A stretch of DNA of 64,000 bases, taken from the IMG/VR virus record IMGVR_UViG_3300010938_000951, positions 1 through 64,000 of that record, one strand, 5' to 3'. A model generated the notes under the pieces. That model was not told the DNA's origin. It did not search any database and saw only the letters and a list, made by a program, of their open reading frames with translations. The position numbers were made by a program, and so were the translations under genes. Shown one piece after another: positions 40,360 to 60,401 of the stretch. Within the stretch, counting starts at the first letter, position 1; each line of letters opens with the position of its first letter.

Positions 40360-40566
40360 ATGTGTGCGGTATCTGTGATTTATGATATGTTTGGCAAGCA
40401 GCCTGATGATTGGTATACACTAGACCGCATTGATTTGTTTAAACGCATGGTGGCTGACGCTAAAGTTTTTGATGAAGAATCTGGTCAGCCCGATTGTGAA
40501 GATCCTGAAAAAGCAAAAATTACTGAACGTATAGAAAATCTAGAAAAAGAATTAGAGCAAAAATAA
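40360..40566 (+). CDS. small conserved phage protein
   Basis: MCAVSVIYD...QPDCEDPEK. Confidence 0.55.
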   Translation: MCAVSVIYDMFGKQPDDWYTLDRIDLFKRMVADAKVFDEESGQPDCEDPEKAKITERIENLEKELEQK

Positions 40567-41087
40567 TGTGCAAAGCTATTTACGCTGGTACGTTTGATCC
40601 TATCACTTTCGGTCATATGGATATTATTAAACGTACTATGCAGTTCGCTAGAGAATTAGTGATTGTAGTTGGAATTAATTCAAATAAACAAACTCTTTTT
40701 ACAGAAGAAGAACGAATTAATTTGATTAATAAATCATTTGATTCTGAAATAGATTTTCTAACGGGCACCAATATTAAAGTAGTTTCTTATCAAGGGTTGA
40801 TGGTAAGCTATGCTAAAGAAATTGGTGCATCTATAATGGTTAGAGGTATTAGATCAGTTTCTGATTTTGAATATGAAATCAACTTAGCTAATGTTAATAA
40901 AACCTTAGCACCAGATATAGAGACTGTCTTTTTACCAACTCGTCCTGAACTAGCTGTTGTTTCTTCTTCGATGGTTAAGGAGATTGCTAAGTTTAATAGA
41001 GATATTAAACAGTATGTTCCAGGCTGTGTAGCAGAAGCAATAGTTTCTAAATTTGGTTTTGTCAAGTTTGGGGAGCCGCAAAAATAA
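40566..41087 (+). CDS. coaD: phosphopantetheine adenylyltransferase
   Basis: YAGTFDPITFGHMDII, RGIRSVSDFEYE, VSSSMVKEIA. Confidence 0.95.
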   Translation: MCKAIYAGTFDPITFGHMDIIKRTMQFARELVIVVGINSNKQTLFTEEERINLINKSFDSEIDFLTGTNIKVVSYQGLMVSYAKEIGASIMVRGIRSVSDFEYEINLANVNKTLAPDIETVFLPTRPELAVVSSSMVKEIAKFNRDIKQYVPGCVAEAIVSKFGFVKFGEPQK

Positions 41088-41100
41088 AAATTAGGGCCAC

Positions 41101-41128
41101 TTGACGGTTCAATTTTTTGGTATACAAT
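41101..41128 (+). promoter_or_regulatory. sigma70-like promoter of the tRNA / Y-like RNA array
   Basis: TTGACG-N16-TACAAT. Confidence 0.7.
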
Positions 41129-41202
41129 GTTCGTTATCCAAATCGCGAAATCGAAAAATCTGGGCATAGCCTGATATAGATGATACGATTCCGCATTTTC
41201 AT

Positions 41203-41285
41203 GGGGGAGTAGCTCAGAGAAAGAGCGCAAGGAGTCCGTAAGGAAAACCTTGAGGTCCCAGGTTTAATTCCTGGCTCCCCCACCA
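41203..41285 (+). ncRNA. tRNA-like RNA with anticodon loop replaced by a GNRA hairpin
   Basis: GGGGGAG/CTCCCCC-ACCA; CAAGG[AG-TCC-GTAA-GGA-AAA]CCTTG. Confidence 0.75.
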
Positions 41286-41326
41286 AGCCATATATTAGTA
41301 GCGTCCTAGGTACTAATAGGCTATAT

Positions 41327-41403
41327 GGGACAGTAGCTCAGTGTTAGAGCACCGGCCTTTAACTGCCGGGGGTCGCTGGTTCAACTCCATGCCTGTCCCA
41401 CCA
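41327..41403 (+). tRNA. atypical tRNA with 8-nt anticodon loop CTTTAACT (identity undetermined)
   Basis: GGGACAG/CTGTCCC-ACCA; bulged T stem. Confidence 0.65.
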
Positions 41404-41463
41404 AACCGAATGCAAGTAGGATTACATCGGATTAAAAATAATCTTACTAACCTTTCGTCGGTT
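41404..41463 (+). ncRNA. Y-like scaffold RNA 1 (no cargo)
   Basis: AACCGA/TCGGTT and AGTAGGATTA/TAATCTTACT stems; CCGAATG and GGATTACAT motifs. Confidence 0.7.
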
Positions 41464-41465
41464 AT

Positions 41466-41552
41466 CCTGTCTGATTCGATGCCTGGGAGCATCTACCGGC
41501 TGTAACCCGGTCGCCAATGTGCTAAGTGGTTCGACTCCACCAGGCAGGACCA
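41466..41552 (+). tRNA. tRNA with Tyr anticodon (GTA), 8/4 allo-tRNA-like fold
   Basis: CCTGTCTG/CAGGCAGG-ACCA, 4-bp T stem, loop CTGTAAC. Confidence 0.75.
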
Positions 41553-41652
41553 AAACTAAACTGTAATAGGAGCTTCGGCTCTAATATTTGTGACGCACAA
41601 GAGTTAAGCAAGTATTTACAGTCTGTTCAATGACAACTGAATATCTGTTTAT

Positions 41653-41729
41653 CGGGGATTAGCTCAATCTGGTAGAGCGCTAGTTTTGGGTACTAGATGT
41701 TGCACGTTCAAATCGTGTATCCCCGACCA
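41653..41729 (+). tRNA. tRNA-Pro(TGG)
   Basis: cloverleaf, loop TTTGGGT, CCA. Confidence 0.9.
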
Positions 41730-41870
41730 TAGAAGATGGTCCTAATCACAGCCCCACAAGGGCCGCGAGTGGAAAACAATAGCATCATACTAGTTCTGAG
41801 TAAGCGGTATTGGTATCTGGCTTACGCTTTCCTTTTCCACAAGTAGGTTGACCTTTTACCAAATCTTCTA
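41730..41870 (+). ncRNA. unknown rod-like RNA between tRNAs
   Basis: nested TAGAAGAT/ATCTTCTA, GTGGAAAA/TTTTCCAC, GTAAGC/GCTTAC. Confidence 0.55.
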
Positions 41871-41875
41871 GTAAT

Positions 41876-41951
41876 GGCCCTGTCGTCTAATGGATAGGAT
41901 AAGAGACTTTCACCCTCTTGATGTTGGGTTCGATTCCCACCAGGGTCGCCA
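41876..41951 (+). tRNA. tRNA-Glu(TTC)
   Basis: cloverleaf, loop CTTTCAC, GCCA. Confidence 0.88.
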
Positions 41952-42059
41952 TGACGAATGCCCGAAAGGGTTTACATTGTATGCGAAACAATCCGATGGA
42001 GTTCGATTCTCCTTTAAGGCTGGTGCCAGGTAAAACAACTCTTTCATTATTAGTCGTCA
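41952..42059 (+). ncRNA. Y-like scaffold RNA 2 (anticodon arm GCG plus T arm)
   Basis: TGACGA/TCGTCA, GAAAGGGTT/AACTCTTTC; ATTGT-ATGCGAA-ACAAT; GGAG-TTCGATT-CTCC. Confidence 0.75.
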
Positions 42060-42061
42060 AT

Positions 42062-42138
42062 CAGAGCGTGGTGTTTAATGGCTAGCATCCGTGGTCTGGA
42101 ACCATGTGGAGTCAGTTCGAATCTGACCGCTCTGACCA
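42062..42138 (+). tRNA. tRNA-Pro(TGG), C33 variant
   Basis: CAGAGCG/CGCTCTG-ACCA, loop TCTGGAA. Confidence 0.8.
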
Positions 42139-42185
42139 ATGCCAGTATAACTCAAATATAATTTGGTAGATTAGTTTGGGCTGGT

Positions 42186-42321
42186 ACATACCGAATGAGC
42201 TTAAGAGCTACTTAGTCCTAAGGTAGGCAGTCCGCTTACCTGACAATGAATGTAGCTACCTTAAAACAACCGTTATAGTTAGGCTCTAAAGGAATTGTGA
42301 CAAACATTTTTGTCGGTATGT
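42186..42321 (+). ncRNA. Y-like scaffold RNA 3 (divergent)
   Basis: ACATACCGA/TCGGTATGT with CCGAATG and TTTGTCGG; lacks GGATTACAT. Confidence 0.55.
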
Positions 42322-42326
42322 TTTAT

Positions 42327-42403
42327 CAGGGAATGATGTTTAATGGCTAGCATCCTACCTTCGGAGAGTAGAAGTCCCGGTTCGAATCCGGGTTCCCTGA
42401 CCA
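42327..42403 (+). tRNA. tRNA-Pro(CGG)
   Basis: CAGGGAA/TTCCCTG-ACCA, loop TTCGGAG. Confidence 0.85.
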
Positions 42404-42536
42404 TCAGCAAATGCCTGTAGGGATTACATTGCATTTGGAGCACGAGGAGAAGGTCCGATTCCTTCCGGCCCGACCATATCGGGACGAGGTGTTATGGCAG
42501 CACGCGTAAAAATAGTCTCTCAATTCTTGTTGCTGA
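42404..42536 (+). ncRNA. Y-like scaffold RNA 4 (circularly permuted Pro-type tRNA)
   Basis: TCAGCAA/TTGCTGA scaffold; order anticodon, T arm, CGGCCCG-ACCA, CGGGACG, D arm. Confidence 0.8.
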
Positions 42537-42815
42537 ATATCTTCGCATTAGTGTAATAGCTAGTGCGAGGACCATGAGGTCACTCAACTGAAACCTCATC
42601 CATCTAAACGGTCGTCCATTATCGGTTAGAGGAAAATGTAAAGTGGACGTAGCCACAAGGTTCCCAGCGATCGAATGGCTACATTATATTGTTTGAAACT
42701 ATCACTGGGGGCGTAATCGGTTGCGCTTGATATTCCGATGACTAATGGGAGTGAAGATAGTTCCATTGCAGCCCGCAGCTATCACGATATAGTAACTCAG
42801 CGGGATGCGTTTTAT

Positions 42816-42889
42816 TCCGAGGTCGTTCAAAGGCAGGACGGGTCGCTGTTAACGACTCTATGTTGGTTCGATTCCAGCCCTCGGAGCCA
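42816..42889 (+). tRNA. tRNA-Asn(GTT)
   Basis: cloverleaf, loop CTGTTAA. Confidence 0.92.
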
Positions 42890-42892
42890 TAT

Positions 42893-42979
42893 TCTGCGGT
42901 AGCCTAATGGTAAGGCAGGCGGCTGTTAACCGCCCGGTGGTAAAACACTTTCTAGGTTCGAGTCCTAGCTGCAGAGCCA
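42893..42979 (+). tRNA. tRNA-Asn(GTT) with long variable arm
   Basis: loop CTGTTAA; extra arm GGTG-GTAAAA-CACT. Confidence 0.85.
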
Positions 42980-42987
42980 AATAATAC

Positions 42988-43342
42988 GGGGACTGATTAG
43001 ACTGGAATGATCCGTATTAGGTGTTGCGTTTGGTCAGTTCTGCGCAACGACAGGAGTTGTCACCGGAACTTTAACCCGGCCAATCTTCTGAGATGAATGC
43101 GGTAAGGACTACATTACTAATAGCGATCCGCAAGGACAACCCACTCCTTTACAGTACACAAGAGCGGTAGAAAATGCAAACTGAGTACCTGACAAACTTG
43201 ATAACCAGTAAAGCTTCAAGTGTAGGCGGTGAACTACTAAAATTTGCTGCGGACCTTATCGATATCCATAACAGGACTCTTTAAGCAAACCCGCTGTCTT
43301 TACTACCTCTTGTATTGAAATACAAGTTCTTGTCATCAATCT
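42988..43342 (+). ncRNA. unknown ~350-nt structured RNA
   Basis: no ORF; long-range pairings GACAGGAGTTGT/ACAAGTTCTTGTC and ACAAGAG(C)GGTAG/CTACCTCTTGT. Confidence 0.5.
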
Positions 43343-43344
43343 AT

Positions 43345-43419
43345 TCCGCTCTAGTGTAATTAGCACGACGATCCTTTTTCGGGTCGGGGGTCATGGTTCG
43401 AGTCCATGGGGCGGAGCCA
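43345..43419 (+). tRNA. atypical tRNA (T-rich anticodon loop, identity undetermined)
   Basis: TCCGCTC/GGGCGGA-GCCA; arm CGATC-CTTTTTCG-GGTCG. Confidence 0.65.
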
Positions 43420-43500
43420 AAGCGAGCCATAGAGGAACTTCCTTCTACTCATTTATTAACTGAAAACAGTTCTTCTGCTTTCTCGCTAACTTTTACTACT

Positions 43501-43674
43501 ATGGAAAAAATTGCAACATATAATTTGTCTGAATGTATTCATGCCCGCAATGGTTTAAATGAGCCTTTATGTGGGTTTGATCCTAAACAGGCAAAATTAA
43601 CAGACAACATAGAAGAAGTTGACTGTCCTAGTTGCAAGAAATATAAACAATTTCATCGTTCACAACCAATTTAA
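43501..43674 (+). CDS. small Cys/His protein
   Basis: CIH..LCG..VDCPSC. Confidence 0.5.
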   Translation: MEKIATYNLSECIHARNGLNEPLCGFDPKQAKLTDNIEEVDCPSCKKYKQFHRSQPI

Positions 43675-43689
43675 TACCATGAGAAAATT

Positions 43690-44118
43690 ATGTTTACATC
43701 TACCGGAATCTTGCATTATGATCCCGGCTTGGGATCTAAACAATATGACCCTTGGTGGGCTCTTCTAATCTGTGACGATGAAGTGTCTAGGTATTATGCC
43801 TGGTTATTAAAGAGAAATGGAGTAGAAGTTTATCCCAATGATAAAGGATTGTGGGGCACACACGTTTCAGTTTTGAAAGGTCAAATCCCAGAAAATACGA
43901 CTAATTGGGGGAAATACGAAGGCTACGAAGTAGAATTCCATTACAATCATCTTGTCCGTTATGATAACGGTAAACATGCTTGGGTGGATGTATATTCCGA
44001 AGATTTATCGTATATACGTCAAGAATTAGGATTCGAGGCAAAGCCCTGGTATCACTTGACAATAGGAAGATTAGTTAGGCCATATGCAGTAGACTTTACA
44101 AAGTATGGCATAACATGA
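43690..44118 (+). CDS. 2H phosphoesterase-like protein
   Basis: two HxS/T motifs: THVSV and YHLTI. Confidence 0.65.
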   Translation: MFTSTGILHYDPGLGSKQYDPWWALLICDDEVSRYYAWLLKRNGVEVYPNDKGLWGTHVSVLKGQIPENTTNWGKYEGYEVEFHYNHLVRYDNGKHAWVDVYSEDLSYIRQELGFEAKPWYHLTIGRLVRPYAVDFTKYGIT

Positions 44119-44132
44119 TATAACTGCTATAC

Positions 44133-44207
44133 GGTCCCGTCGTTCAATGGTTAGGACAGCACCTTGTCACGGTGCATACGAGGGTTCGATTCCCTTCGGG
44201 ACCGCCA
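44133..44207 (+). tRNA. tRNA-Asp(GTC)
   Basis: cloverleaf, loop TTGTCAC. Confidence 0.92.
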
Positions 44208-44216
44208 GCATATAAT

Positions 44217-44291
44217 GCCTCCGTACGCATCTGGTGAAGCGGGGTGATTGTCAATCATCTGAGGGCGGTTCGATTCCGCTCGGGGGCGCCA
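44217..44291 (+). tRNA. tRNA-Asp(GTC)
   Basis: cloverleaf, loop TTGTCAA. Confidence 0.85.
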
Positions 44292-44362
44292 AGCCAAATG
44301 CCTTGATAGGATTACATTGAACTGTTAATTCAAACCTATATCTTATCTAATTTTTGTTGGCT
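44292..44362 (+). ncRNA. Y-like scaffold RNA 5 (isolated Asn anticodon stem-loop)
   Basis: AGCCAA/TTGGCT, GATAGGAT/ATCTTATC; cargo TTGAA-CTGTTAA-TTCAA. Confidence 0.8.
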
Positions 44363-44366
44363 ACAT

Positions 44367-44445
44367 CGGACAAAAGGTAAGCTGGTGGCATCCGGAAGTC
44401 TTATAAACTTCTCATAGGAGGGTTCGATTCCCTCTTGTCCGACCA
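44367..44445 (+). tRNA. tRNA-Ile(TAT)
   Basis: CGGACAA/TTGTCCG-ACCA, GAAGT-CTTATAA-ACTTC. Confidence 0.8.
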
Positions 44446-44448
44446 TAT

Positions 44449-44525
44449 GGCACGGTAGTCCAAAGGCAGGAGACACCTGACTTAAAATCAGTTCAGTGTG
44501 GGTTCGAATCCCACCCGTGCTACCA
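44449..44525 (+). tRNA. tRNA-Leu(TAA), short variable loop
   Basis: loop CTTAAAA, CCA. Confidence 0.85.
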
Positions 44526-44557
44526 AATGATAATCTTGCGCAAGATTATCAGATAAA

Positions 44558-44702
44558 GACAGAATGCCCCGAAGGAATACATAGAACAGCAATTGAATGA
44601 AAATCAATAGATTGTAGGTGCGAATCCTACCTCTCCCACCAATAATAAGATATATGGGAGGGAAGCTAAATAAAACAAACTTCTTTCAAATCTTTGTCTG
44701 TC
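44558..44702 (+). ncRNA. Y-like scaffold RNA 6 (circularly permuted tRNA-Phe)
   Basis: GACAGA/TCTGTC; ATTGA-ATGAAAA-TCAAT, T arm, CTCTCCC-ACCA, linker, GGGAGGG. Confidence 0.8.
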
Positions 44703-44705
44703 AAT

Positions 44706-44781
44706 GGAGCTTGAGCAAGTGTGGTCATTGCATCGGTCTGAAAAGCCGACAAATCCGGTTCGATCCCGGAAGGCTCCACCA
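44706..44781 (+). tRNA. tRNA-Phe(GAA)
   Basis: loop CTGAAAA, CCA. Confidence 0.85.
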
Positions 44782-44790
44782 ACTACCAAT

Positions 44791-44865
44791 GGTCCTGTAG
44801 CTCAGTGGTAGAGCGCTTGCCTGAAGAGCAGGGCGTCGGGGGTTCAATTCCCTCCGGGACCACCA
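44791..44865 (+). tRNA. tRNA-Phe(GAA)
   Basis: loop CTGAAGA, CCA. Confidence 0.92.
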
Positions 44866-45219
44866 ATGAGAATTGTTCAGAAGCCTTGGGGCCATGAAGA
44901 AATCTGGGCCGAAACTGACAGTTATGTTGGTAAAATCCTAGTAATTAATCCTGGTCACAAACTTTCTCGACAATATCATAATTTCAAAGAAGAAACTTTT
45001 AGAGTACTAGAAGGTATTCTTTATCTTGAAATTGGCAATCCTGGTGATATAGATTTTGCTACTTATACTTTATATGAAGGAAATTCTTTTCATTGCCCGC
45101 CAAAAACAATTCATAGAATGATTTGTTCTACTGGCAATATTCAGGCAGTTAAAGTACTAGAAGTATCGACCAATCATTTGGATGATGTAGTAAGACTAGA
45201 AGATGACTATAAAAGATAA
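44866..45219 (+). CDS. cupin (mannose-6-phosphate isomerase C-terminal-like)
   Basis: KPWGHE, LSRQYH..KEET, IHR, DDVVRLEDDY. Confidence 0.85.
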   Translation: MRIVQKPWGHEEIWAETDSYVGKILVINPGHKLSRQYHNFKEETFRVLEGILYLEIGNPGDIDFATYTLYEGNSFHCPPKTIHRMICSTGNIQAVKVLEVSTNHLDDVVRLEDDYKR

Positions 45220-45394
45220 AATAGTAGAGTTAGAAATTGAAAGACTTTCTTTATTAGAAGTAGTAAGGCAATTTACAATACATGATTGCGATGCAAGAAT
45301 GTGGTGTGAACTAAATGAATTCTTAATAAAGATTGAAGAAAGAGCAGAAGAAATAAATCGTGCCATAGCTCAGTTGGTTAGAGCGCATGTCTGA
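45203..45394 (+). CDS. hypothetical protein overlapping tRNA-Ile
   Basis: short ORF. Confidence 0.4.
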   Translation: MTIKDKIVELEIERLSLLEVVRQFTIHDCDARMWCELNEFLIKIEERAEEINRAIAQLVRAHV

Positions 45395-45435
45395 TACACA
45401 TGAGGTCGCAGGTTCGACTCCCGCTGGCACGACCA
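45359..45435 (+). tRNA. tRNA-Ile(GAT)
   Basis: loop CTGATAC, CCA. Confidence 0.92.
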
Positions 45436-45444
45436 AGATAACAT

Positions 45445-45519
45445 GGGATGTTAGTTCAACGGTGAGAACGGAAGTCCGATAAACTTCAGACAATGGTTCA
45501 ACTCCATTACATCCTACCA
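45445..45519 (+). tRNA. tRNA-Ile(GAT), C33 variant
   Basis: GAAGT-CCGATAA-ACTTC, CCA. Confidence 0.8.
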
Positions 45520-45520
45520 C

Positions 45521-45660
45521 TGAAACAAATGCTCGCAGAGGATTACATCGCATATCCAGCGGGTTACGTGAGTGCGAATCTCACTCTCAGCTCATTATGC
45601 TGAGATCGTCTAGCAGTCTAGGACACCTAAAAAATAGTCTTCTCAATTCTTGTTGTTTCA
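45521..45660 (+). ncRNA. Y-like scaffold RNA 7 (circularly permuted Gly-type tRNA)
   Basis: TGAAACAA/TTGTTTCA; CGC-ATATCCA-GCG, T arm, TCTCAGC/GCTGAGA, D arm. Confidence 0.8.
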
Positions 45661-45667
45661 CAATTAT

Positions 45668-45863
45668 GCCTCCTATCATGGCTGGAAACTGATAGCGATA
45701 CCACCAGGCGGTCCCAGAGGGATGCAGCAGGGGAAGTACAAGAGTATCAAACAGAAGGGACGCCTTCTAGCCTGCTCACATGGTTGGAAACTGTGACGCG
45801 GTCTTGGTCGCGATAGACCAAGTAGTAAAACCGCAAGCCTGCCCACATGGTCGGAAACTGTGG
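45668..45863 (+). repeat. three copies of a hairpin with conserved core CATGGYYGGAAACTG
   Basis: copies at 45668, 45770 and 45837 with co-varying stems. Confidence 0.75.
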
Positions 45864-45866
45864 AAA

Positions 45867-45943
45867 GAATCGTCTAGCTCAATGGTAGAGCTACGTCACT
45901 AGTGACGACGTGGATCTGGGTTCGAATCCCAGGATGATTCCCA
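45867..45943 (+). tRNA. His-like tRNA (G-1:C73) with 9-nt anticodon loop
   Basis: GAATCGTC/GATGATTC-CCA; ACGTC-ACTAGTGAC-GACGT. Confidence 0.7.
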
Positions 45944-45945
45944 GC

Positions 45946-46097
45946 GAAGCAAATGCCCCGAAGGTTTACATTTGAGAAACTGTATTATCGCAAGATAGTC
46001 GTGGGTTCGAATCCCACATCACCGCAAGGTGATTGGCTGAGTGGTCTAAAGCGACAGTGCCGCAAGGCATGCTAACTTTCAAATTTTTTGTTGCTTC
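45946..46097 (+). ncRNA. Y-like scaffold RNA 8 (YrlA-like, permuted class II tRNA)
   Basis: GAAGCAA/TTGCTTC; variable arm, GTGGG-TTCGAAT-CCCAC, acceptor ATCACC-GCAA-GGTGAT, D arm. Confidence 0.85.
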
Positions 46098-46098
46098 A

Positions 46099-46228
46099 TC
46101 TCCCGCTAGTTTAAAACGAAACACCTGTTATAGAGGACGTATACTTCAATCTATGAGGGGTTAGTAGTCCAGAAGAATACCTTCCAGTGAGGAAGGAGAT
46201 GCGAGTGCAAGTCTCGCAAGGGAGACCA
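46099..46228 (+). ncRNA. tRNA-like RNA with ~55-nt insert between D and anticodon arms
   Basis: TCTCCC/GGGAGA-CCA, CCTTC-CAGTGAG-GAAGG, GCGAG-TGCAAGT-CTCGC. Confidence 0.65.
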
Positions 46229-46232
46229 ATTT

Positions 46233-46559
46233 ATGGAAAAGAAAATTCCAACTATGAAGGATCTCAAAGAAGGTCCGCCATTACTCTGTCCAATTTGTGA
46301 CAGACCAAATTATTTTCCATCCGACCATCATATGGTACCAAAGTCTAGGGGCGGTAAAACTACCGAAACTATTTGTGAAGATTGCCATAAAGCAATTCAT
46401 GCGCATTTCACCAATAAAGAATTAGAAGAAACGTATCATACGCCAGAAGCTTTGCTATCTCATGAGGGGTTTGCAAAACAGATTAAATTCCTTTCTAAAC
46501 AGGATCCTGGTGGCCGAACCAAAACGAAAAAGAATAAAGATCGTTTGAGGCGAGAATGA
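46233..46559 (+). CDS. small HNH nuclease-like protein
   Basis: CPIC..HHMVPKSRGG..CEDCHKAIH. Confidence 0.8.
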   Translation: MEKKIPTMKDLKEGPPLLCPICDRPNYFPSDHHMVPKSRGGKTTETICEDCHKAIHAHFTNKELEETYHTPEALLSHEGFAKQIKFLSKQDPGGRTKTKKNKDRLRRE

Positions 46560-46825
46560 GTAGGATTATTGAATTAGTAAAAGCTGGCGCCAAGATTCAA
46601 CAAGAAATTGTTGATGAATTAGTAGTTGATGTCTTAAAAGACGTCGAATTACATCACGAAGAACTTGACATAGCTTTGTCGTTAGATTTTGATAAAATAA
46701 AAGATCCAAATGATAAAGATTTAGCCATTTATCTGGCATTGGATGCTATACGTGATGCGAGAGAAACATTATCTATAATGAAGAAGTTATTAAGAGCCAG
46801 CGAGCTTTTAGATCGTATCGGGTGA
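46556..46825 (+). CDS. hypothetical protein
   Basis: ATGA overlap. Confidence 0.55.
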   Translation: MSRIIELVKAGAKIQQEIVDELVVDVLKDVELHHEELDIALSLDFDKIKDPNDKDLAIYLALDAIRDARETLSIMKKLLRASELLDRIG

Positions 46826-46828
46826 TTT

Positions 46829-47020
46829 ATGGAAGAGAAGAAAGATTTTTGTGAAAAGTGTCAAAAAGAAGTTTGGTCGCTGTATTTACATAAACACTGT
46901 CCTGAATGTGACTCAGATCCAAGCCAGCATGAGCTAAGAAATTATGACATGATGTGGCACGAAGGAGACATTCATTGTGGTAAGTGCGGAACATTTGTTA
47001 GATATTATGACGCCGGCTAA
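46829..47020 (+). CDS. small zinc-finger protein
   Basis: three CxxC pairs. Confidence 0.55.
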   Translation: MEEKKDFCEKCQKEVWSLYLHKHCPECDSDPSQHELRNYDMMWHEGDIHCGKCGTFVRYYDAG

Positions 47021-47086
47021 TCGTTCGATATATCTATTACAACCTGCGTGAGCCCTAGTGGCCACGGTCGAATTAAAGGTGGTAAT

Positions 47087-47674
47087 ATGAATAAAATTCA
47101 AAGATTGCAAATGAGGGGCGTGAGGCTCACGTCCGAGGCAGACTGGGAGAAAGTTATAATTTCCCCTGAAGAGGTAGAAGAAGGCATTAGGCTCGGTACG
47201 CTGCAAGAGATGGAGTCCGCAAAACTGGGATTAAAAGATCGATCATTCTCCGGAGATGAAGGAGATTCGTTAGCAAGGTCAATCGCAGCCAAACAGTTCG
47301 AATTTGCAATTAGACGATGGGGTGGTGGTACTGCTCGCATTGTGCAAATTAATGAGTTCCATGACTTCCCGGACGTTGGGAAAGTGAATGCTCGATATAC
47401 ATTCAACACTGGTTACGGGATGATTATTACCAACCGTGATCAGGGTAAAGTACCAATGATCTTGGGAACGGGTAAATGTCCTGAGTTTTATTTAATGGGA
47501 TGGTTTATTCCAGATTATGCAAAACAAATTATTTTTAAAGTCCACCAAAAACGCAATGAAGATTGTGAAACCGATTTTGGTTTCTTGCAGGAAATGAAAG
47601 ACCACGAATGTTGTCAGCTTAATATGCAAATGCTTTTTCCTATGTGGTCTTTCAATAAAGAACTACTAAAATGA
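47087..47674 (+). CDS. hypothetical protein
   Basis: AAGGTGG RBS before ATG. Confidence 0.65.
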   Translation: MNKIQRLQMRGVRLTSEADWEKVIISPEEVEEGIRLGTLQEMESAKLGLKDRSFSGDEGDSLARSIAAKQFEFAIRRWGGGTARIVQINEFHDFPDVGKVNARYTFNTGYGMIITNRDQGKVPMILGTGKCPEFYLMGWFIPDYAKQIIFKVHQKRNEDCETDFGFLQEMKDHECCQLNMQMLFPMWSFNKELLK

Positions 47675-47796
47675 TATAAGTTTAGGAAGCAAAACAAAGT
47701 ACCTGCTGTTCAAGGGAAAGTTTTGATGAGGAGAGCCGGAACAGGGCAATCCTAAGTTAGGGGTGGACTCAACATCCAACCGCCGCTTCCGCTTAT

Positions 47797-47873
47797 GGGC
47801 TCTTAGTGTTAACGGTAGCACACCTGACTCTTAATCAGGCAAGTCCTCGGTTCGAATCCGGGAGAGCCCACCA
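47797..47873 (+). tRNA. tRNA-Lys(CTT)
   Basis: loop CTCTTAA, CCA. Confidence 0.9.
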
Positions 47874-48104
47874 GATGTATCACAAATGGGAATTCGGGAA
47901 AGGTCCCGCATATAGAATTGGTTTTCAATTCCTACATGTATGGTGGTCATTTACTTCCAAATGTTTTGGAATTAATTTAGGCTCGCGTTATAGAATTTTT
48001 ATTCAGCGCCTTGCTTTTCCAAACTCAAAACCTTATGTTAGGTTTGAGTTTCATCTTCCCAATAAGAAGATGCCAAATCATCCGAAGTGTTACAGTTTTG
48101 AAAT

Positions 48105-48182
48105 GGGTTCGTAGTATAATTGGATTATTACCTCTCCCTCTTAAGGAGCACGATGCGGGTTCGAGTCCCGCTGAACCCACCA
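48105..48182 (+). tRNA. tRNA-Lys(CTT)
   Basis: loop CTCTTAA, CCA. Confidence 0.82.
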
Positions 48183-48195
48183 ATACGAGGTAAGT

Positions 48196-48396
48196 ATGAC
48201 TCGCAATGAAATCAAAGATTTGATCATGGTAATTCTTGGTCAAGCCGATTATGATCTGATGAAAGCATATGATCCAGAAACGGCTGAAGAACCCGAGTAT
48301 GCCGAATCAGAAATGGAAAGATTAATCGATACAGTAGTGGAACATCTCAAAAAGTTAGAAAAGAAAAAGACTAAGAAGGTAAAGAAAAAGAAGTAA
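48196..48396 (+). CDS. hypothetical protein
   Basis: GAGGT RBS. Confidence 0.55.
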   Translation: MTRNEIKDLIMVILGQADYDLMKAYDPETAEEPEYAESEMERLIDTVVEHLKKLEKKKTKKVKKKK

Positions 48397-48397
48397 T

Positions 48398-48471
48398 GGG
48401 TTTATAATTCAATGGCAGAATAGCGGTCTTTTAAACCGTCCATCAGGGTTCGATTCCCTGTGAACCTACCA
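48398..48471 (+). tRNA. tRNA-Lys(TTT)
   Basis: loop CTTTTAA, CCA. Confidence 0.9.
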
Positions 48472-48493
48472 CATGCATGATATATTAAAAGTC

Positions 48494-48949: not shown

Positions 48950-49015
48950 TGTTAGTGGTAGCATAGTGGACTTTTAATCCATCGGTCTCGGTTCGATTCC
49001 AGAGTGGCCCTACCA
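48940..49015 (+). tRNA. tRNA-Lys(TTT)
   Basis: loop CTTTTAA, CCA. Confidence 0.85.
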
Positions 49016-49036
49016 AGCATAATTAGTAATAGTAAT

Positions 49037-50056: not shown

Positions 50057-50057
50057 G

Positions 50058-50606: not shown

Positions 50607-50607
50607 T

Positions 50608-51021: not shown

Positions 51022-51030
51022 AAAAAATCA

Positions 51031-51473: not shown

Positions 51474-51521
51474 TATATAATAAGTAAGTTGTAAGTCCAA
51501 CTTTTTAAATGGAGAAACAAT

Positions 51522-51623
51522 ATGCTTTCTACTTTGACTTTTGTTATGGTAGCTTGTTTATTCGCAAACCTCGCCTATGAAAAGGGCGGAAAGCTTGTCG
51601 AATTAGTTAAGAGCAAGTTCTAA
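51522..51623 (+). CDS. 33-aa membrane peptide
   Basis: GGAG RBS, hydrophobic, followed by hairpin. Confidence 0.5.
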   Translation: MLSTLTFVMVACLFANLAYEKGGKLVELVKSKF

Positions 51624-53063: not shown

Positions 53064-53137
53064 TCTCCGATCGTCTAATGGTAGGACGGGTCGCTCTGAA
53101 CGATCAAATCGAGGTTCGAATCCTCAGCGGAGAACCA
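53064..53137 (+). tRNA. tRNA-Gln(CTG)
   Basis: loop CTCTGAA, ACCA. Confidence 0.82.
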
Positions 53138-53297
53138 GCAACAAATGCCAGCTAGGATTACATAGCTCGCAACTATTTTCCCCGCCAGCCCGAGAGGGCA
53201 AATAAACTTTTATTTTTTATGTTACTAACACGGGGAAATGTTCAAGTCGGTCTGAAAAACCGATAAGGAACTCTTCTTGGCACCTTTAGTTGTTGCT
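53137..53297 (+). ncRNA. Y-like scaffold RNA 9 (two anticodon-like stem-loops)
   Basis: AGCAACAA/TTGTTGCT, GGATTACAT; ATAG-CTCGCAA-CTAT and TCGGT-CTGAAAA-ACCGA. Confidence 0.7.
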
Positions 53298-57830: not shown

Positions 57831-58169
57831 GTGAAAGTTATGAGCTTACCTTGGTCACGAGATATGCAATTAGATCCTGGCACATTTGGAGGGTCTCCAG
57901 CATGTCATGTATTAGTTGATATGATGAACAAAAATGTGATTCCTGTTCAGGAAAAACATCGAGTTCTATCATTCATTAGCGGTACTATTTTGCATTTCAA
58001 GGCCATCTCTGCCATCAAAGAAAGAGGTATAAGGGCACGGGTTATGGTGCTTTTGAAAAATGATCTGTTTTCCAGAATAGATCAAATGCCATATCCAGCT
58101 CATTTCAACTCTTATCTGAAGAACGTAGTAAATCACCACTTCAGGCGATACTTAAAAGAAGTAGTCTAG
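57831..58169 (+). CDS. hypothetical protein
   Basis: ORF whose end overlaps RNase P helix P1. Confidence 0.5.
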   Translation: MKVMSLPWSRDMQLDPGTFGGSPACHVLVDMMNKNVIPVQEKHRVLSFISGTILHFKAISAIKERGIRARVMVLLKNDLFSRIDQMPYPAHFNSYLKNVVNHHFRRYLKEVV

Positions 58170-58488
58170 ACAATCGCTCTGCAAGGAGAGGAAAGTCGGA
58201 GCTACATAGGACAGTCTGCTGGCTAACGGCCAGGCGTAGTAATACGACGGAAAGTGCAACAGAAAATAAACCGCCCGCAAGGGTAAGGGTGAAATGGTGA
58301 GGTAAGAGCTTACCGCATGTTTGGCGACAAATATGGCAAGGCAAACCCCAGATGTAGCAAGCTAAACAGAGAGTGACTTGTCCGGTCAATACTCTCGGGT
58401 TAGTGCTGGAGCCGTCAAGTAATTGTCGGCCAAGATTAATGATTGTCTCGATTTATAGACAGAACTCCGCTTATAGGGCTACTTCTTT
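58155..58488 (+). ncRNA. rnpB: RNase P RNA (bacterial type A)
   Basis: P1 AAGAAGTAGTC/GGCTACTTCTT; GAGGAAAGTCGGAGC, GGAAAGTGCAACAGAAA, GGGTGAAA..GGTAAGAGC, GGCAAACCCC, ACAGAACTCCGCTTA with compensatory P4. Confidence 0.95.
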
Positions 58489-58510
58489 TAAGTTCTTTTA
58501 AGGAATTATT

Positions 58511-59040: not shown

Positions 59041-59733
59041 ATGGCAGATAAAGTTACCACCGTTAGCGCAAAAGGTTGCGTTGTAACAGATTTTGATACG
59101 GCTACATTTGCACTCTCATTTAATGAGTTTGCTCCTAAAGCCAAAGACGCAAAGCTGAAGCTAAAGAAAGGTGCAGCTAAGATTACAGCGGCCCTTGATG
59201 ATCTCAAGAAACGTGGGTTGGAGTTTTTAACCAACAACTATCGCACTAATATTACAGTGCAACCAAATTATGTTTATGACCGTTCGTCCGGCCAAAACAG
59301 AATGGAAGGACAGAAGGCAACTTACTCTGTAACGTTCCAAACTCCTACACTAGAAATGGTTAGTGAAGCATACGATCTACTTTCTGAATTGGAAGTGAAT
59401 GAACTTTCAATTAATTCTCCTGCTTATTCTGTCAGGTCCGAAGCGCAATTTAAGCAACAAGCATTGGAAGATGCTTGGAAGGTAGCTCAAGTTTTGTTTG
59501 CTAATCAGTGCAAGGTTCTTGGGTTTGATGAAACTAAATTCTCTGTTGATAGCTGGCAGGTTAATTATAGTGGCCATGACCATGGTGGATTTGCTAAGGG
59601 TCGTAGCTATTCAAACTCTGTGCTAGCGGCATCAGCTTCGGCTGATTATGGTGATGAAGCCATTGAACTAAATGCTGGCCGTGCTATCATTGAAGTAGTT
59701 CTGACTGTCGATTACGTTCGTACCGGATCATGA
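59041..59733 (+). CDS. SIMPL (DUF541) domain protein
   Basis: VTTVSAKG...D.A, ITVQPNY.Y, QQALEDA pattern. Confidence 0.7.
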   Translation: MADKVTTVSAKGCVVTDFDTATFALSFNEFAPKAKDAKLKLKKGAAKITAALDDLKKRGLEFLTNNYRTNITVQPNYVYDRSSGQNRMEGQKATYSVTFQTPTLEMVSEAYDLLSELEVNELSINSPAYSVRSEAQFKQQALEDAWKVAQVLFANQCKVLGFDETKFSVDSWQVNYSGHDHGGFAKGRSYSNSVLAASASADYGDEAIELNAGRAIIEVVLTVDYVRTGS

Positions 59734-60401
59734 AAATTAAGCTAGCCTATCCTAAAATTCCTGATACTTTAGACTGTCCACTCAAGCAATGTATTGCTTT
59801 TGAAAAATTGGATGGAACTAATTTGCATTGGGTTTGGAATAGGGAAAAAGGCTGGCATGCTTTTGGTACTCGCCGAGATAGATTTAATCTAGATGAACAA
59901 GGAATTGCTTCTTTCAACCAAGCACATCCCGGACTGGAGGAAGCAATTTCCTTGTTTAGAAAATCGTATGAGCATCTCGCTGAGTATCCACTTAAACATA
60001 AATATGGTCCAATATCAGAATCCACGGGTGACGTAATTCTATTTACAGAGTTCCTTGGAGATAAATCTTTTGCTGGTTCTCACCAAAAAGGCGACCCCAA
60101 AAGATTAGTATTATTTGATGTAATGACTGATAAAGGAATAACTCCACCAGATCAGTTTGTGATTGATTTTGGACAGTTTGATGATATTCCGGGATATTAT
60201 ATTCCACAAATTGTTTTTAGTGGAAAGTTTTCAGGACAATTATTTGTAGATGTTAGGAAAAACAAGTTCAAAGTAAACGAGGGCGTGGTTGTCAAAGGTA
60301 TGTTTGCCGGGCAAGTTTACATGGCCAAGATTAAGACGACTGACTATTTAGAGCGCCTAAAGAAAGAATTTAAAAACGATTGGAAAAATTATTGGGAATG
60401 A
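59730..60401 (+). CDS. RNA ligase (Rnl2-like adenylyltransferase domain)
   Basis: YPKI, EKLDGTN, TEFLG, LFDV, EGVVVK, AKIKT. Confidence 0.85.
   Translation: MKIKLAYPKIPDTLDCPLKQCIAFEKLDGTNLHWVWNREKGWHAFGTRRDRFNLDEQGIASFNQAHPGLEEAISLFRKSYEHLAEYPLKHKYGPISESTGDVILFTEFLGDKSFAGSHQKGDPKRLVLFDVMTDKGITPPDQFVIDFGQFDDIPGYYIPQIVFSGKFSGQLFVDVRKNKFKVNEGVVVKGMFAGQVYMAKIKTTDYLERLKKEFKNDWKNYWE

What the first reader, a model, noticed from the sequence alone, without database searches (positions are those of the whole stretch)
42404..42536. Complete circularly permuted Pro-type tRNA, with internal CCA, inside a Y-like scaffold
Seen: after TTACAT the order is TGC-ATTTGGA-GCA-CG, T arm GAAGG-TCCGATT-CCTTC, CGGCCCG-ACCA, linker TAT, CGGGACG, D arm GTGTT..AGCAC, then G-CG and TAAAAA. 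Joining the terminal CG to the initial TGC rebuilds a 5-bp anticodon stem CGTGC/GCACG. The body (C1-G72, A73) is Pro-like and the element follows Pro tRNAs. Inference: excision and ligation followed by opening of the acceptor loop would give a tRNA, as for permuted tRNA genes of red algae and some archaea. An RNA ligase and RNase P RNA are encoded in this window.
Basis: partly seen in the sequence, partly recalled or inferred. Interest (0 to 1): 0.85.

Follow-up and report, generated by a model that had tools for sequence, protein, structure and literature searches.

The report
Phage Y RNA carrying tRNA mimic
The 133-base element is a divergent member of a known class of small RNAs (YrlA-type Y RNAs, partners of the Ro60 protein) whose middle part imitates a circularly permuted tRNA; it is an unusually complete imitation, but the evidence points to a mimic and not to the precursor of a working tRNA.

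Summary
When the two halves are joined in silico, ARAGORN calls a 74-nt tRNA. Its anticodon reads UUG (Gln), not UGG (Pro).

The element is a YrlA-type Y RNA:
- Rfam's YrlA model aligns end to end to 42404-42539, but at only 17 bits against a threshold of 69.
- A Ro60 gene lies 7.3 kb upstream on the same strand.
- Six more copies of the same scaffold lie in the window's tRNA array.
- Scaffold copies found elsewhere by DNA motif alone lie next to Ro60 genes in six other contigs.

YrlA RNAs are already described in the literature as resembling circularly permuted tRNAs, probably derived from dimeric tRNA transcripts.

Orthologues at the same position in related jumbo phages keep the T arm, the acceptor stem (with strong covariation) and usually an internal ACCA. 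Their "anticodon" varies (UUG, UAG, UAU) or the hairpin is absent. The T loop has C55, whereas all 31 genuine tRNAs in the window have U55. There is no splicing motif.

Excision and ligation into a decoding tRNA is therefore unlikely. Opening of the acceptor loop by RNase P is plausible: the ACCA-UAU-C1 sequence copies the window's tRNA-tRNA junctions, and Mycobacterium smegmatis YrlA is a precedent.

Verdict: a new variant of a known kind, of moderate interest.

The parts
42404..42410 (+). Closing stem, 5' strand (UCAGCAA). It starts immediately after the CCA of tRNA-Pro(CGG).
   Evidence: Pairs with 42530-42536. 100% paired in six orthologues, 4 of 7 pairs compensatory. The same stem covaries in ten minimal family members.
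42411..42419 (+). 5' internal loop, AUGCC + UGUA. This is the YrlA 5' signature and the presumed Ro60 contact.
   Evidence: AUGC is invariant in all family members. It aligns to 'AAUGC' of the Rfam YrlA consensus. Binding to Ro60 is inferred, not tested.
42420..42426 (+). Upper scaffold stem, 5' strand (GGGAUUA). It includes the conserved YUAY (UUAC, which runs on to 42427).
   Evidence: Pairs with UAGUCUC at 42513-42519. The core covaries across the family: GGGA/UCUC, AGGA/UCUU, GGGU/ACUC, AGGU/ACUU, AGGAC/GUCUU, CGGUU/AACUG. It matches the paired region of the YrlA model.
42430..42442 (+). Anticodon-like hairpin (UGC-AUUUGGA-GCA), at the position of the YrlA 'V' stem-loop.
   Evidence: 3-bp stem with compensatory variants UUC/GAA, UGC/GCA and UCC/GGA in orthologues. 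The 7-nt loop has U at position 2 and a purine at position 6. It is absent in L078b. It is a 14-nt insertion relative to the Rfam YrlA model.
42443..42444 (+). CG that can pair with CG 42505-42506 (tRNA positions 42-43 with 27-28).
   Evidence: Invariant in all six orthologues, so the pairing is untested. Stacked on the hairpin it gives the 5-bp anticodon stem drawn by ARAGORN.
42449..42465 (+). T arm (GAAGG-UCCGAUU-CCUUC), with C at position 55.
   Evidence: 5 bp, 100% paired, 4 of 5 pairs compensatory. All 31 tRNAs of the window have U54-U55.
42466..42472 (+). Acceptor stem, 3' strand (CGGCCCG).
   Evidence: Pairs with 42480-42486. 7 bp with one A.G mismatch. 95% paired, 6 of 7 pairs compensatory in orthologues.
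42473..42479 (+). Acceptor loop: ACCA (discriminator + CCA) followed by UAU.
   Evidence: ACCA is kept in B, L078b, L080b, L082b, L139, L147 and L089, while the loop varies from 1 to about 100 nt. UAU is the commonest -3..-1 leader of the window's tRNAs (12 of 31). CCA-UAU-tRNA junctions occur at 42889/42893 and 44445/44449.
42480..42486 (+). Acceptor stem, 5' strand (CGGGACG). The predicted RNase P cut lies 5' of 42480.
   Evidence: Pairing as above. Cleavage is inferred from M. smegmatis YrlA (PMC4201824) and from the tRNA-junction-like context. It was not tested.
42489..42503 (+). D arm (GUGU-UAUGGCA-GCAC), with the G18-G19 equivalent.
   Evidence: 4 bp, 100% paired, nearly invariant.
42513..42519 (+). 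Upper scaffold stem, 3' strand (UAGUCUC).
   Evidence: See 42420-42426.
42520..42529 (+). 3' internal loop (UCAAUUCUUG).
   Evidence: Conserved YYCAAWUYUYG block in the family. It aligns to 'AAaAcUuGu' of the YrlA model.
42530..42536 (+). Closing stem, 3' strand (UUGCUGA).
   Evidence: See 42404-42410.
33424..35115 (+). Ro60/Rsr orthologue (563 aa), the presumed protein partner.
   Evidence: Pfam vWA_Ro60 9e-15 and TROVE 4e-10. PHROG 850 RNA-binding protein 2e-39. Full-length matches to Thermus phage phiLo Ro60 (9KOP), D. radiodurans Rsr (2NVO) and Ro60 (9NEN).
42327..42403 (+). tRNA-Pro(CGG). Its CCA end abuts the element, so tRNA 3' processing would define the element's 5' end.
   Evidence: Five of the seven scaffold copies in the window start 0 nt, and a sixth 2 nt, after an upstream tRNA's CCA.
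41404..41463 (+). Paralogous scaffold, minimal (60 nt, no tRNA module).
41952..42059 (+). Paralogue A: scaffold + anticodon-like hairpin (loop AUGCGAA) + T arm.
44292..44362 (+). Paralogue, minimal, with only an anticodon-like hairpin. Its loop CUGUUAA is identical to that of the window's tRNA-Asn.
44557..44703 (+). Paralogue C: 5-bp anticodon-like arm (loop AUGAAAA), T arm, 7-bp acceptor stem with internal ACCA, no D arm.
   Evidence: Weak tRNA (23.6 bits) and permuted-tmRNA (21.2 bits) hits.
45946..46097 (+). Paralogue D: classical YrlA layout, with the acceptor stem closed by a GCAA tetraloop.
   Evidence: Rfam YrlA 26.3 bits over T arm, acceptor stem and D arm; E = 6e-4 when searched alone.
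53137..53297 (+). Paralogue E: scaffold with a different, non-tRNA-like insert.
58158..58489 (+). Phage-encoded RNase P RNA (type A), a candidate for cutting the acceptor loop.
   Evidence: Rfam RF00010, 279.9 bits, full length. Its role here is inferred.
59730..60401 (+). RNA-ligase-family protein (223 aa).
   Evidence: Pfam RNA_ligase 29.8 bits, cut-off 27. PHROG 548 RNA ligase 2e-10. No evidence links it to this element.

Best explanation
The element is one of at least seven YrlA-type Y RNAs of an uncultured jumbo phage (IMG/VR contig of 266,899 bp).

**Steps shown or inferred.**
1. It is transcribed as part of the long tRNA-array precursor (inferred). It is freed by the enzymes that mature the neighbouring tRNAs. 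Its first base follows the CCA of tRNA-Pro(CGG) (shown).
2. Its two ends pair into a stem / internal loop / stem scaffold that carries the YrlA signature AAUGC...GGGAUUAC. The structure is shown by covariation.
3. This scaffold is the platform for the phage's own Ro60 protein. Binding is inferred from the association between scaffold and Ro60 genes and from literature on YrlA.
4. The apical insert folds as a tRNA-shaped module in circularly permuted order: anticodon-like hairpin, T arm, acceptor stem, D arm. The helices are shown by covariation.
5. Because the acceptor loop is a faithful copy of a tRNA-tRNA junction (ACCA-UAU-N1), RNase P probably cuts 5' of 42480 and exonucleases trim back to CCA (inferred). 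The result would be a two-piece Y RNA, about 73 + 57 nt, with a free CCA end that stays held together by the stems. This is what happens to M. smegmatis YrlA.

The module serves as a tRNA look-alike that recruits or occupies tRNA-binding factors on the Ro60 particle. It is not excised and ligated into a decoding tRNA.
For: **Class identity.**
- Rfam YrlA aligns end to end to 42404-42539 with matching scaffold motifs and T / acceptor / D order.
- Paralogue D scores 26 bits, E = 6e-4.
- A Ro60 orthologue lies on the same strand.

**Family and Ro60 linkage.**
- The window holds seven scaffold copies.
- Scaffold copies found by DNA motif alone lie directly beside a Ro60 gene on the same strand in L016, L018, L060, L067, L200 and L287.
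- They also lie 5-8 kb downstream of Ro60 in most of the phage contigs retrieved by similarity to Ro60.

**Structure.** Covariation supports the closing stem, T arm and acceptor stem and the upper stem.

**Mimic rather than decoder.**
- Orthologues at the same position, between the Pro and Asn tRNAs, read as Gln-UUG, Leu-UAG, Ile-UAU or a 9-nt loop, or lack the hairpin.
- C55 replaces the U55 seen in 31 of 31 tRNAs.
- The acceptor end resembles Pro, while the loop reads Gln.
- The module is closer to the Y-RNA orthologues (65-74%) than to any tRNA (at most 60%).

**Processing.**
- All 31 tRNAs encode CCA, and 24 of 31 have AU at -2/-1.
- ACCA is kept across acceptor loops of 1 to about 100 nt.

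**Literature.**
- YrlA RNAs 'resemble circularly permuted tRNAs' and may derive from dimeric tRNAs (bioRxiv 10.1101/312249).
- M. smegmatis YrlA is cut by RNase P and carries CCA in vivo (PMC4201824).
- A phage Ro60 binds phage Y-like RNAs (PMC12135203).
Against: - The Rfam score (17.2 bits, E = 0.23 even in a 151-nt search) is far below the family threshold of 69. At window scale the model does not report the element at all.
- The published GNCGAAN0-1G motif is not literally present in this copy (AUGCC-UGUA-GGG), though several paralogues have CGAA.
- The element lies 7.3 kb from Ro60, further than the 4 kb typical of YrlA.
- No expression, binding or cleavage data exist for this uncultured phage.
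- C55 and the A.G mismatch could weaken recognition by RNase P.
- Some B-type relatives have closed loops without CCA (L019b, L097, L159), so cleavage is not universal in the subfamily.
Confidence: 0.7

Rival explanations
1. The element is a circularly permuted tRNA gene. The scaffold is removed, the ends 42506 and 42430 are ligated into a circle, and the acceptor loop is opened. This yields a decoding tRNA (Gln-UUG by register, or Pro by body).
For: - ARAGORN accepts the permuted join as a tRNA, and also the joins of L080b, L082b and L030b.
- ACCA and an RNase-P-type leader are encoded.
- RNase P RNA and an RNA-ligase-family gene lie in the window.
- A nearby tRNA (53304-53401) seems to carry a ~25-nt insertion, which hints at unusual RNA processing.
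Against: - The anticodon is not conserved among orthologues at the same position, and the hairpin is missing in the closest relative.
- There is no bulge-helix-bulge motif. The two cut sites lie opposite each other at one helical junction.
- No tRNA-splicing endonuclease domain was found among the 60 window proteins scanned against Pfam.
- Genuine tRNA-Gln(UUG) and two tRNA-Pro(UGG) genes are present.
- C55 replaces an otherwise invariant U55.
- Identity elements are mixed: the acceptor end is Pro/Ile-like, and the window's own tRNA-Gln(UUG) has U1-A72 and G73.
- The scaffold is conserved, occurs without a tRNA module, and travels with Ro60.
Confidence: 0.04
2. A closed-loop mimic. The element is a YrlA-type Y RNA, but its acceptor loop is never cut. 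ACCA-UAU is only an inherited trace of the tandem-tRNA ancestor, and the 133-nt RNA works intact, like Salmonella YrlA.
For: - Most characterised YrlA RNAs are not cut (PMC4201824; bioRxiv 10.1101/312249).
- Paralogue D and several relatives close the stem with a GCAA tetraloop.
- The A.G mismatch and C55 depart from an ideal RNase P substrate.
- Some B-type relatives lack CCA.
Against: - ACCA at the start of the loop and U at -1 persist, while the rest of the loop changes completely in sequence and in length (1 to about 100 nt). This is hard to explain without selection on processing.
- The 7-bp stem is the feature that made M. smegmatis YrlA cleavable.
- The same junction is cut at two tRNA pairs in the same array.
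Confidence: 0.2
3. A decaying relic. The element is a tandem tRNA pair degraded by deletions. It is flanked by chance complementarity and has no function of its own.
For: - The window is full of duplicated tRNAs.
- Single-sequence folding is no better than shuffles.
Against: - The element is conserved at the same position, with compensatory changes, in phages whose Ro60 proteins are only 65-86% identical.
- The scaffold is shared with more than 30 elements in other contigs, next to Ro60.
Confidence: 0.03

Closest known systems
YrlA (Y RNA-like A; Rfam RF02553; Chen et al. 2014, PMC4201824; structure in bioRxiv 10.1101/312249)
   Same: - The 5'/3' ends pair into a scaffold with AAUGC...GGGA-YUAC and a 3' ...CUUGU block.
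- The apical domain has the order V stem-loop, T arm, acceptor stem closed by a loop, D arm. This is a circularly permuted tRNA.
- It is encoded on the same strand as a Ro60 orthologue.
- It is already known in phages: mycobacteriophages, CcrColossus, Bacillus phage G.
   Different: - It scores only 17 bits against the Rfam model.
- The V stem-loop looks like an anticodon arm, whereas YrlA is described as lacking an anticodon loop.
- ACCA is encoded in the acceptor loop, whereas YrlA is described as lacking a free CCA end.
- The T loop has C55.
- It lies 7.3 kb from Ro60, inside a tRNA array, as one of at least seven copies.
Mycobacterium smegmatis YrlA (PMC4201824)
   Same: [quoted passage not shown]
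- RNase P cuts in the acceptor loop, and the 5' piece ends in CCA.
- The two halves remain bound to Ro60/Rsr.
   Different: - There, CA is added after cleavage and nibbling. Here the whole ACCA is in the gene, followed by a tRNA-type leader (UAU).
- Cleavage here is only predicted.
Two-piece (circularly permuted) tmRNA of alpha-proteobacteria, cyanobacteria and others (Rfam RF04321 and related families; from general knowledge)
   Same: - The gene order is T arm, acceptor 3' strand, CCA, intervening loop, acceptor 5' strand.
- The loop is removed, so that a CCA end and a mature 5' end arise inside one transcript and the pieces stay paired.
   Different: - There is no tag reading frame and there are no pseudoknots.
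- ARAGORN finds no tmRNA.
- Only weak partial hits appear: 9 bits on this element and 21 bits on paralogue C.
Circularly permuted tRNA genes of Cyanidioschyzon merolae and some archaea
   Same: The 3' half lies upstream of the 5' half in one transcript, and the acceptor ends are joined by a short linker.
   Different: - Those precursors carry a bulge-helix-bulge motif, are circularised by the splicing endonuclease and ligase, and supply otherwise missing tRNAs.
- Here there is no such motif and no endonuclease was found. The tRNA would be redundant, its anticodon is not conserved, and the flanks form a conserved Ro60-type scaffold.
Thermus phage phiLo Ro60 with Yrl1/Yrl2 (PMC12135203)
   Same: A phage-encoded Ro60 binds phage-encoded Y-like RNAs that have a stem / internal loop / stem design. 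The window's Ro60 matches its structure 9KOP over the full length.
   Different: The phiLo RNAs lie just upstream of Ro60 and are not reported there to have a tRNA-like domain.

Membership tests
YrlA / bacterial and phage Y RNA-like (RF02553) | Score at or above the Rfam gathering threshold (69 bits) | tested here: not met
   No hit in the 64-kb or 13-kb searches. The score is 17.2 bits, E = 0.23, with a full-length alignment (model 1-114 to 42404-42539) when the element is searched alone.
YrlA / bacterial and phage Y RNA-like (RF02553) | Ends paired into a stem carrying the conserved 5' motif and YUAY | tested here: met
   The closing and upper stems covary. AAUGC and UUAC align to the model consensus. 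The literal GNCGAAN0-1G motif of Chen et al. is absent in this copy; paralogues A, C and D contain its CGAA core.
YrlA / bacterial and phage Y RNA-like (RF02553) | tRNA-like domain in the order (V) - T arm - closed acceptor stem - D arm | tested here: met
   T arm and acceptor stem have 4 of 5 and 6 of 7 compensatory pairs. The D arm is conserved.
YrlA / bacterial and phage Y RNA-like (RF02553) | Encoded near a Ro60/TROVE gene on the same strand (usually within 4 kb) | tested here: inconclusive
   Same strand, but 7.3 kb away. Relatives of the scaffold lie directly next to Ro60 in L016, L018, L060, L067, L200 and L287.
YrlA / bacterial and phage Y RNA-like (RF02553) | Bound by Ro60/Rsr | not testable with these tools
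   Needs pull-down or a gel-shift assay.
Circularly permuted tRNA gene (precursor of a functional tRNA) | The rejoined halves form a canonical cloverleaf | tested here: met
   ARAGORN calls tRNA-Gln(UUG), 74 nt, with one A.G mismatch.
Circularly permuted tRNA gene (precursor of a functional tRNA) | Bulge-helix-bulge motif formed by leader and trailer at the two cut sites | tested here: not met
   The sites 42429/42430 and 42506/42507 face each other at one helical junction. A 3-nt linker (CAU) and a 6-nt linker (UAAAAA) lead to the scaffold stem, with no 4-bp offset.
Circularly permuted tRNA gene (precursor of a functional tRNA) | Anticodon and identity conserved among orthologues; fills a decoding need | tested here: not met
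   Orthologues at the same position carry UUG, UAG, UAU, a 9-nt loop or no hairpin. Gln(UUG) and Pro(UGG) genes are already present.
Circularly permuted tRNA gene (precursor of a functional tRNA) | Universal tRNA nucleotides (U55 in the T loop) | tested here: not met
   The T loop is UCCGAUU, with C55. All 31 window tRNAs have U54-U55.
Circularly permuted tRNA gene (precursor of a functional tRNA) | Splicing endonuclease available | tested here: inconclusive
   None was found among the 60 window ORFs scanned against Pfam. The other 200 kb of the phage and the unknown host were not examined.
Two-piece (permuted) tmRNA | tRNA-like domain plus tag reading frame and pseudoknots | tested here: not met
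   ARAGORN finds no tmRNA. There is only a 9-bit partial hit.
Canonical tRNA (RF00005) | Collinear cloverleaf | tested here: not met
   Neither ARAGORN nor Rfam calls a tRNA in 42404-42536 in native order.

The most novel reading that the evidence does not exclude
The phage makes a panel of Ro60-bound Y RNAs that each display a different tRNA look-alike. Some are cut by RNase P into two-piece molecules with a true CCA end and an anticodon-like arm. The loops resemble those of Gln, Arg, Asn, Phe and Ala tRNAs; one is identical to the phage's tRNA-Asn loop.

These RNAs would act as baits or sensors for host tRNA-targeting defence enzymes (anticodon nucleases, modification enzymes, possibly synthetases). 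That would couple them to Ro60-based RNA surveillance and to the phage's own tRNA set, RNase P and RNA ligase.

A Y RNA that can be charged, or cleaved in place of a tRNA, would be a new kind of phage counter-defence.
Probability: 0.12. Interest if true: 0.8.

Novelty: new variant of a known kind. Interest (0 to 1): 0.4.

Why it matters
Y RNAs with a tRNA-like domain have been known since 2014, but what the tRNA mimic is for remains open. This phage family offers unusually informative variants:
- Several paralogues sit in one genome, ranging from a bare scaffold to a nearly complete tRNA.
- They are embedded in a tRNA array, so the tRNA-processing machinery would set their ends.
- They show a conserved encoded CCA, a leader like those that RNase P cuts after, and anticodon-like loops. 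Characterised YrlA RNAs are said to lack a free CCA end and an anticodon loop.

This supports the proposed origin of YrlA from dimeric tRNA transcripts almost literally. It also gives testable predictions on cleavage, charging and binding partners.

It also shows that Rfam's YrlA model misses this phage subfamily: none of the window's seven copies reaches the family threshold.

Tried and rejected
- **Single-sequence folding of the element:** z = -0.29, no signal.
- **Megablast of 41000-46500 against GenBank phages:** no match.
- **Motif scan of genome contigs:** 120 rows, nearly all chance hits. Only L200 and L287 are real family members.
- **Free best-7-mer test for the upper scaffold stem against shuffled tails:** not discriminating, because the tails are AT-rich. 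The fixed-register covariation pattern was used instead.
- **MAFFT alignments:** these misplace the 3-bp anticodon-like stem and the 3' strand of the upper stem. Those two helices were therefore judged by eye from the sequences, not from the pair counts.
- **ARAGORN, with and without introns, on 42130-42335 and 42530-42830:** nothing found.
- **Covariance model of the scaffold:** not built. The variable insert (0-200 nt) and the imperfect alignments made it unlikely to add to the regular-expression and closing-stem screen.
- **Two review papers (PMC10870794, PMC6047535):** not held in the library.
- **Considered and rejected:** permuted tmRNA (no tag frame, no ARAGORN call), a protein-coding reading (only incidental ORFs of at most 54 aa), and a terminator or attachment-site reading (no terminator-like site at the element).
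Full report

It has:
- a 7-bp closing stem (42404-42410 with 42530-42536);
- the block AUGCC-UGUA-GGGAUUACAU;
- a small hairpin UGC-AUUUGGA-GCA (42430-42442), then CG;
- a 4-nt variable loop;
- a T arm (42449-42465);
- an acceptor 3' strand (42466-42472), then ACCA and UAU;
- the complementary acceptor 5' strand (42480-42486);
- a D arm (42489-42503), then G, CG and UAAAAA;
- a conserved 3' block.

No tRNA is called here in native order. When I joined 42480-42506 to 42430-42476 in silico, ARAGORN called a 74-nt tRNA with all four arms. The anticodon in the standard 7-nt register is UUG (Gln), not UGG (Pro). The acceptor stem has one A.G mismatch. Folding the single sequence gives no signal (z = -0.29), so the case rests on comparison with related sequences.

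**2. Where the window comes from, and what surrounds the element.**

The window is the first 64 kb of an IMG/VR contig of 266,899 bp, a jumbo phage. Nearly all its genes are on the + strand. From 41.2 to 53.4 kb it carries a tRNA array, and there are 31 ARAGORN tRNAs in the window overall. It also has:
- a full-length type A RNase P RNA at 58158-58489;
- an RNA-ligase-family protein at 59730-60401;
- at 33424-35115, a 563-aa Ro60/Rsr orthologue.

The Ro60 assignment rests on TROVE plus Ro60-type vWA domains. It also has full-length matches to the solved structures of Thermus phage phiLo Ro60, Deinococcus Rsr and Ro60.

**3. The element is one copy of a repeated scaffold.**

The 5' block recurs in the window far above chance: 9 matches against 1.7 expected, with no shuffle reaching 9. 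With a closing-stem requirement, seven copies are found: 41404, 41952, 42404, 44292, 44557, 45946 and 53137.

Their positions relative to tRNAs are regular:
- Five of the seven start 0 nt, and a sixth 2 nt, after the CCA of an upstream tRNA.
- Five end 2-6 nt before the next tRNA.

The RNAs would therefore be released from the array transcript by tRNA processing.

Two copies (60 and 71 nt) are the scaffold alone. The scaffold is thus the constant part, and the insert between UUACAU and AAAA is variable.

The scaffold structure is:
- a closing stem, with 7 of 8 pairs compensatory among ten minimal members;
- an asymmetric internal loop, with AUGCC on the 5' side;
- an upper stem whose core covaries cleanly: GGGA/UCUC, AGGA/UCUU, GGGU/ACUC, AGGU/ACUU, AGGAC/GUCUU, CGGUU/AACUG.

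**4. The scaffold travels with Ro60.**

Seven related phage contigs were found with the Ro60 protein (65-86% identical), and most carry the scaffold 5-8 kb downstream. More telling are the copies found by DNA motif alone, with no reference to Ro60. These lie directly beside a Ro60 gene on the same strand (about 50-78% identical) in L016, L018 (five tandem copies), L060 and L067. The same holds for the only two genuine hits among 120 genome-contig matches, L200 and L287.

**5. It is a YrlA-type Y RNA.**

Searched alone, the element is aligned by Rfam's YrlA model from end to end (model 1-114 to 42404-42539). The following all fall in register:
- AAUGC, GGGA-YUAC and the 3' ...CUUGU block;
- the T arm, closed acceptor stem and D arm.

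The score is only 17.2 bits (E = 0.23; threshold 69), so by the curated test it is not a member. Paralogue D, whose acceptor stem is closed by a GCAA tetraloop, scores 26.3 bits, E = 6e-4.

The literature describes this architecture:
- A 5' motif, YUAY, a V stem-loop, T arm, acceptor stem closed by a loop, and D arm, encoded near Ro60 in more than 250 bacteria and 22 phages (PMC4201824).
[quoted passage not shown] - M. smegmatis YrlA has a 7-bp acceptor stem. RNase P cuts it in the acceptor loop, and it carries CCA in vivo (PMC4201824).
- A phage Ro60 has been shown to bind phage Y-like RNAs (PMC12135203).

**6. What the orthologues say about this copy.**

B-type elements lie between the Pro and Asn tRNAs in L078, L080 and L082, as in the window. 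Further members occur in L019, L030, L089, L139, L147, L159 and others.

On a six-sequence alignment the proposed structure gives:
- 91% paired cells, against 76% in shuffles and 33-53% with slid partners;
- 15 pairs changed on both sides, with 0 of 500 shuffles reaching this;
- T arm 100% paired, with 4 of 5 pairs compensatory;
- acceptor stem 95% paired, with 6 of 7 pairs compensatory.

The CG/CG pairs are invariant, so they are uninformative. The small hairpin keeps a 3-bp stem with compensatory variants (UUC/GAA, UGC/GCA, UCC/GGA). Its loop is AUUUGGA, AUUAGGA, AUUAUAA, AUACGGA or a 9-nt loop. It is deleted in the closest relative, L078b (86% Ro60 identity).

The permuted joins are called Gln-UUG, Leu-UAG, Ile-UAU, Ser (9-nt loop), or nothing. 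A decoding tRNA would not change identity like this while staying at the same locus.

**7. Further points against a working tRNA.**

- All 31 tRNAs of the window have U54-U55. This element and its orthologues have UCCGAUU (C55), and paralogue C has UGCGAAU.
- C1-G72/A73 matches the Pro tRNAs, but also two Ile tRNAs. The window's tRNA-Gln(UUG) has U1-A72/G73. Acceptor end and loop therefore point to different amino acids.
- The module is 65-74% identical to its Y-RNA orthologues, but at most 60% identical to any tRNA here.
- tRNA-Gln(UUG) and two tRNA-Pro(UGG) genes already exist.
- No splicing endonuclease domain was seen in the 60 ORFs scanned.

**8. What is unusual.**

- **The acceptor loop copies a tRNA-tRNA junction.** All 31 tRNAs encode CCA. 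The -3..-1 leader is UAU in 12 and AAU in 9. CCA-UAU-tRNA occurs at 42889/42893 and 44445/44449. ACCA directly after the 7-bp stem, and U at -1 before the 5' strand, persist in B, L078b, L080b, L082b, L139, L147 and L089. The loop between them ranges from 1 to about 100 nt with no sequence conservation. That pattern suggests selection on processing. RNase P would cut 5' of 42480, followed by 3' trimming to CCA, giving halves of about 73 and 57 nt that stay paired.
- **The V hairpins often look like anticodon loops.** They are 7 nt, with U at position 2, a purine at 6 and A at 7. Examples are AUGCGAA, AUUUGGA, CUGUUAA, AUGAAAA and CUCGCAA in the window. CUGUUAA is identical to the tRNA-Asn loop.
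- **An internal ACCA tends to go with a non-U55 T loop.** Modules closed by tetraloops mostly keep UUC. The lineages are few and related, so this is a lead only.

**9. Mechanism proposed.**

- Shown: the scaffold and tRNA-like helices, the family, the linkage to Ro60, and the abutment to tRNAs.
- Inferred from the YrlA literature: Ro60 binds the scaffold, and the tRNA-shaped module is an effector or decoy surface.
- Inferred from sequence context and the M. smegmatis precedent: RNase P opens the acceptor loop.
- Not supported: excision and ligation into a tRNA.

**10. Verdict.**

The 'Pro' label and the precursor model are not supported. The element is a divergent phage YrlA, a known kind, with extra tRNA features (encoded CCA, an anticodon-like arm) and an unusual genomic setting. 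I rate it a new variant of a known kind, with interest about 0.4.

Noticed in passing
window 58158-58489: A full-length bacterial type A RNase P RNA (279.9 bits) is encoded by the phage itself, about 5 kb beyond the end of the tRNA array.
   Followed up: no
window 41327-41403 and 43345-43419: Two tRNAs have 8-nt anticodon loops (CU-UUAA-CU and CU-UUUU-CG). ARAGORN reports four-base anticodons.
   Followed up: no
window 42062-42138 and 42327-42403: The two Pro tRNAs just upstream have odd anticodon loops: C33 in UC-UGG-AA, and a 4-bp stem with a 9-nt loop. Both fall below the Rfam tRNA threshold (26.3 and 25.0 bits).
   Followed up: partly
window 53304-53401 and 53413-53808: A 98-nt tRNA (Rfam 39.8 bits) carries an insertion of about 25 nt in the anticodon loop. 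ARAGORN in intron mode calls it tRNA-Met(CAU). The next gene is a PD-(D/E)XK endonuclease (PF11645, 1e-29).
   Followed up: partly
window 42139-42326: A 188-nt non-coding stretch lies between two Pro tRNAs. It has a 9-bp closing stem (ACAUACCGA/UCGGUAUGU) and an AUG...AGAGCU/GGCUCU arrangement that may be a very divergent copy of the Y-like scaffold.
   Followed up: partly
window 42537-42815: A 279-nt non-coding, strongly structured stretch (MFE -87.7 kcal/mol) lies directly downstream of the element. It has no Rfam or ARAGORN match.
   Followed up: partly
window 41203-41282: Rfam calls a tRNA here (52.4 bits), but ARAGORN does not.
   Followed up: no
window 31936-33123, 36920-37780, 40566-41087, 21485-22609: Genes of NAD/ADP-ribose metabolism cluster around Ro60: Nudix with a deoxyribosyltransferase-like domain, microbial PARG, and two cytidylyltransferase/NMNAT-like proteins.
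   Followed up: no
window 8822-10441: The phage encodes a class II aminoacyl-tRNA synthetase of the Asp/Lys/Asn type (2e-82), next to a tRNA-Leu.
   Followed up: no
window 44133-53137: Most tRNAs occur as two or more non-identical copies of the same anticodon side by side: Asn x2, Asp x2, Phe x2, Ile-GAU x2, Lys x4, Gln x3.
   Followed up: no
L018:1580-2261 (- strand): Five YrlA-like elements lie in tandem directly upstream of a Ro60 gene. One of them has a perfect 7-bp acceptor stem closed by the 5-nt loop ACCAU.
   Followed up: partly
window 44614-44664 (paralogue C): There is a weak hit to Rfam's permuted tmRNA model (21.2 bits) over the T arm, acceptor stem and ACCA region. Paralogue C has a 5-bp anticodon-like arm with loop AUGAAAA and sits just before two tRNA-Phe(GAA) genes.
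   Followed up: partly
window 35152-36828: A 558-aa ORF immediately downstream of Ro60 has no Pfam or PHROG match.
   Followed up: no
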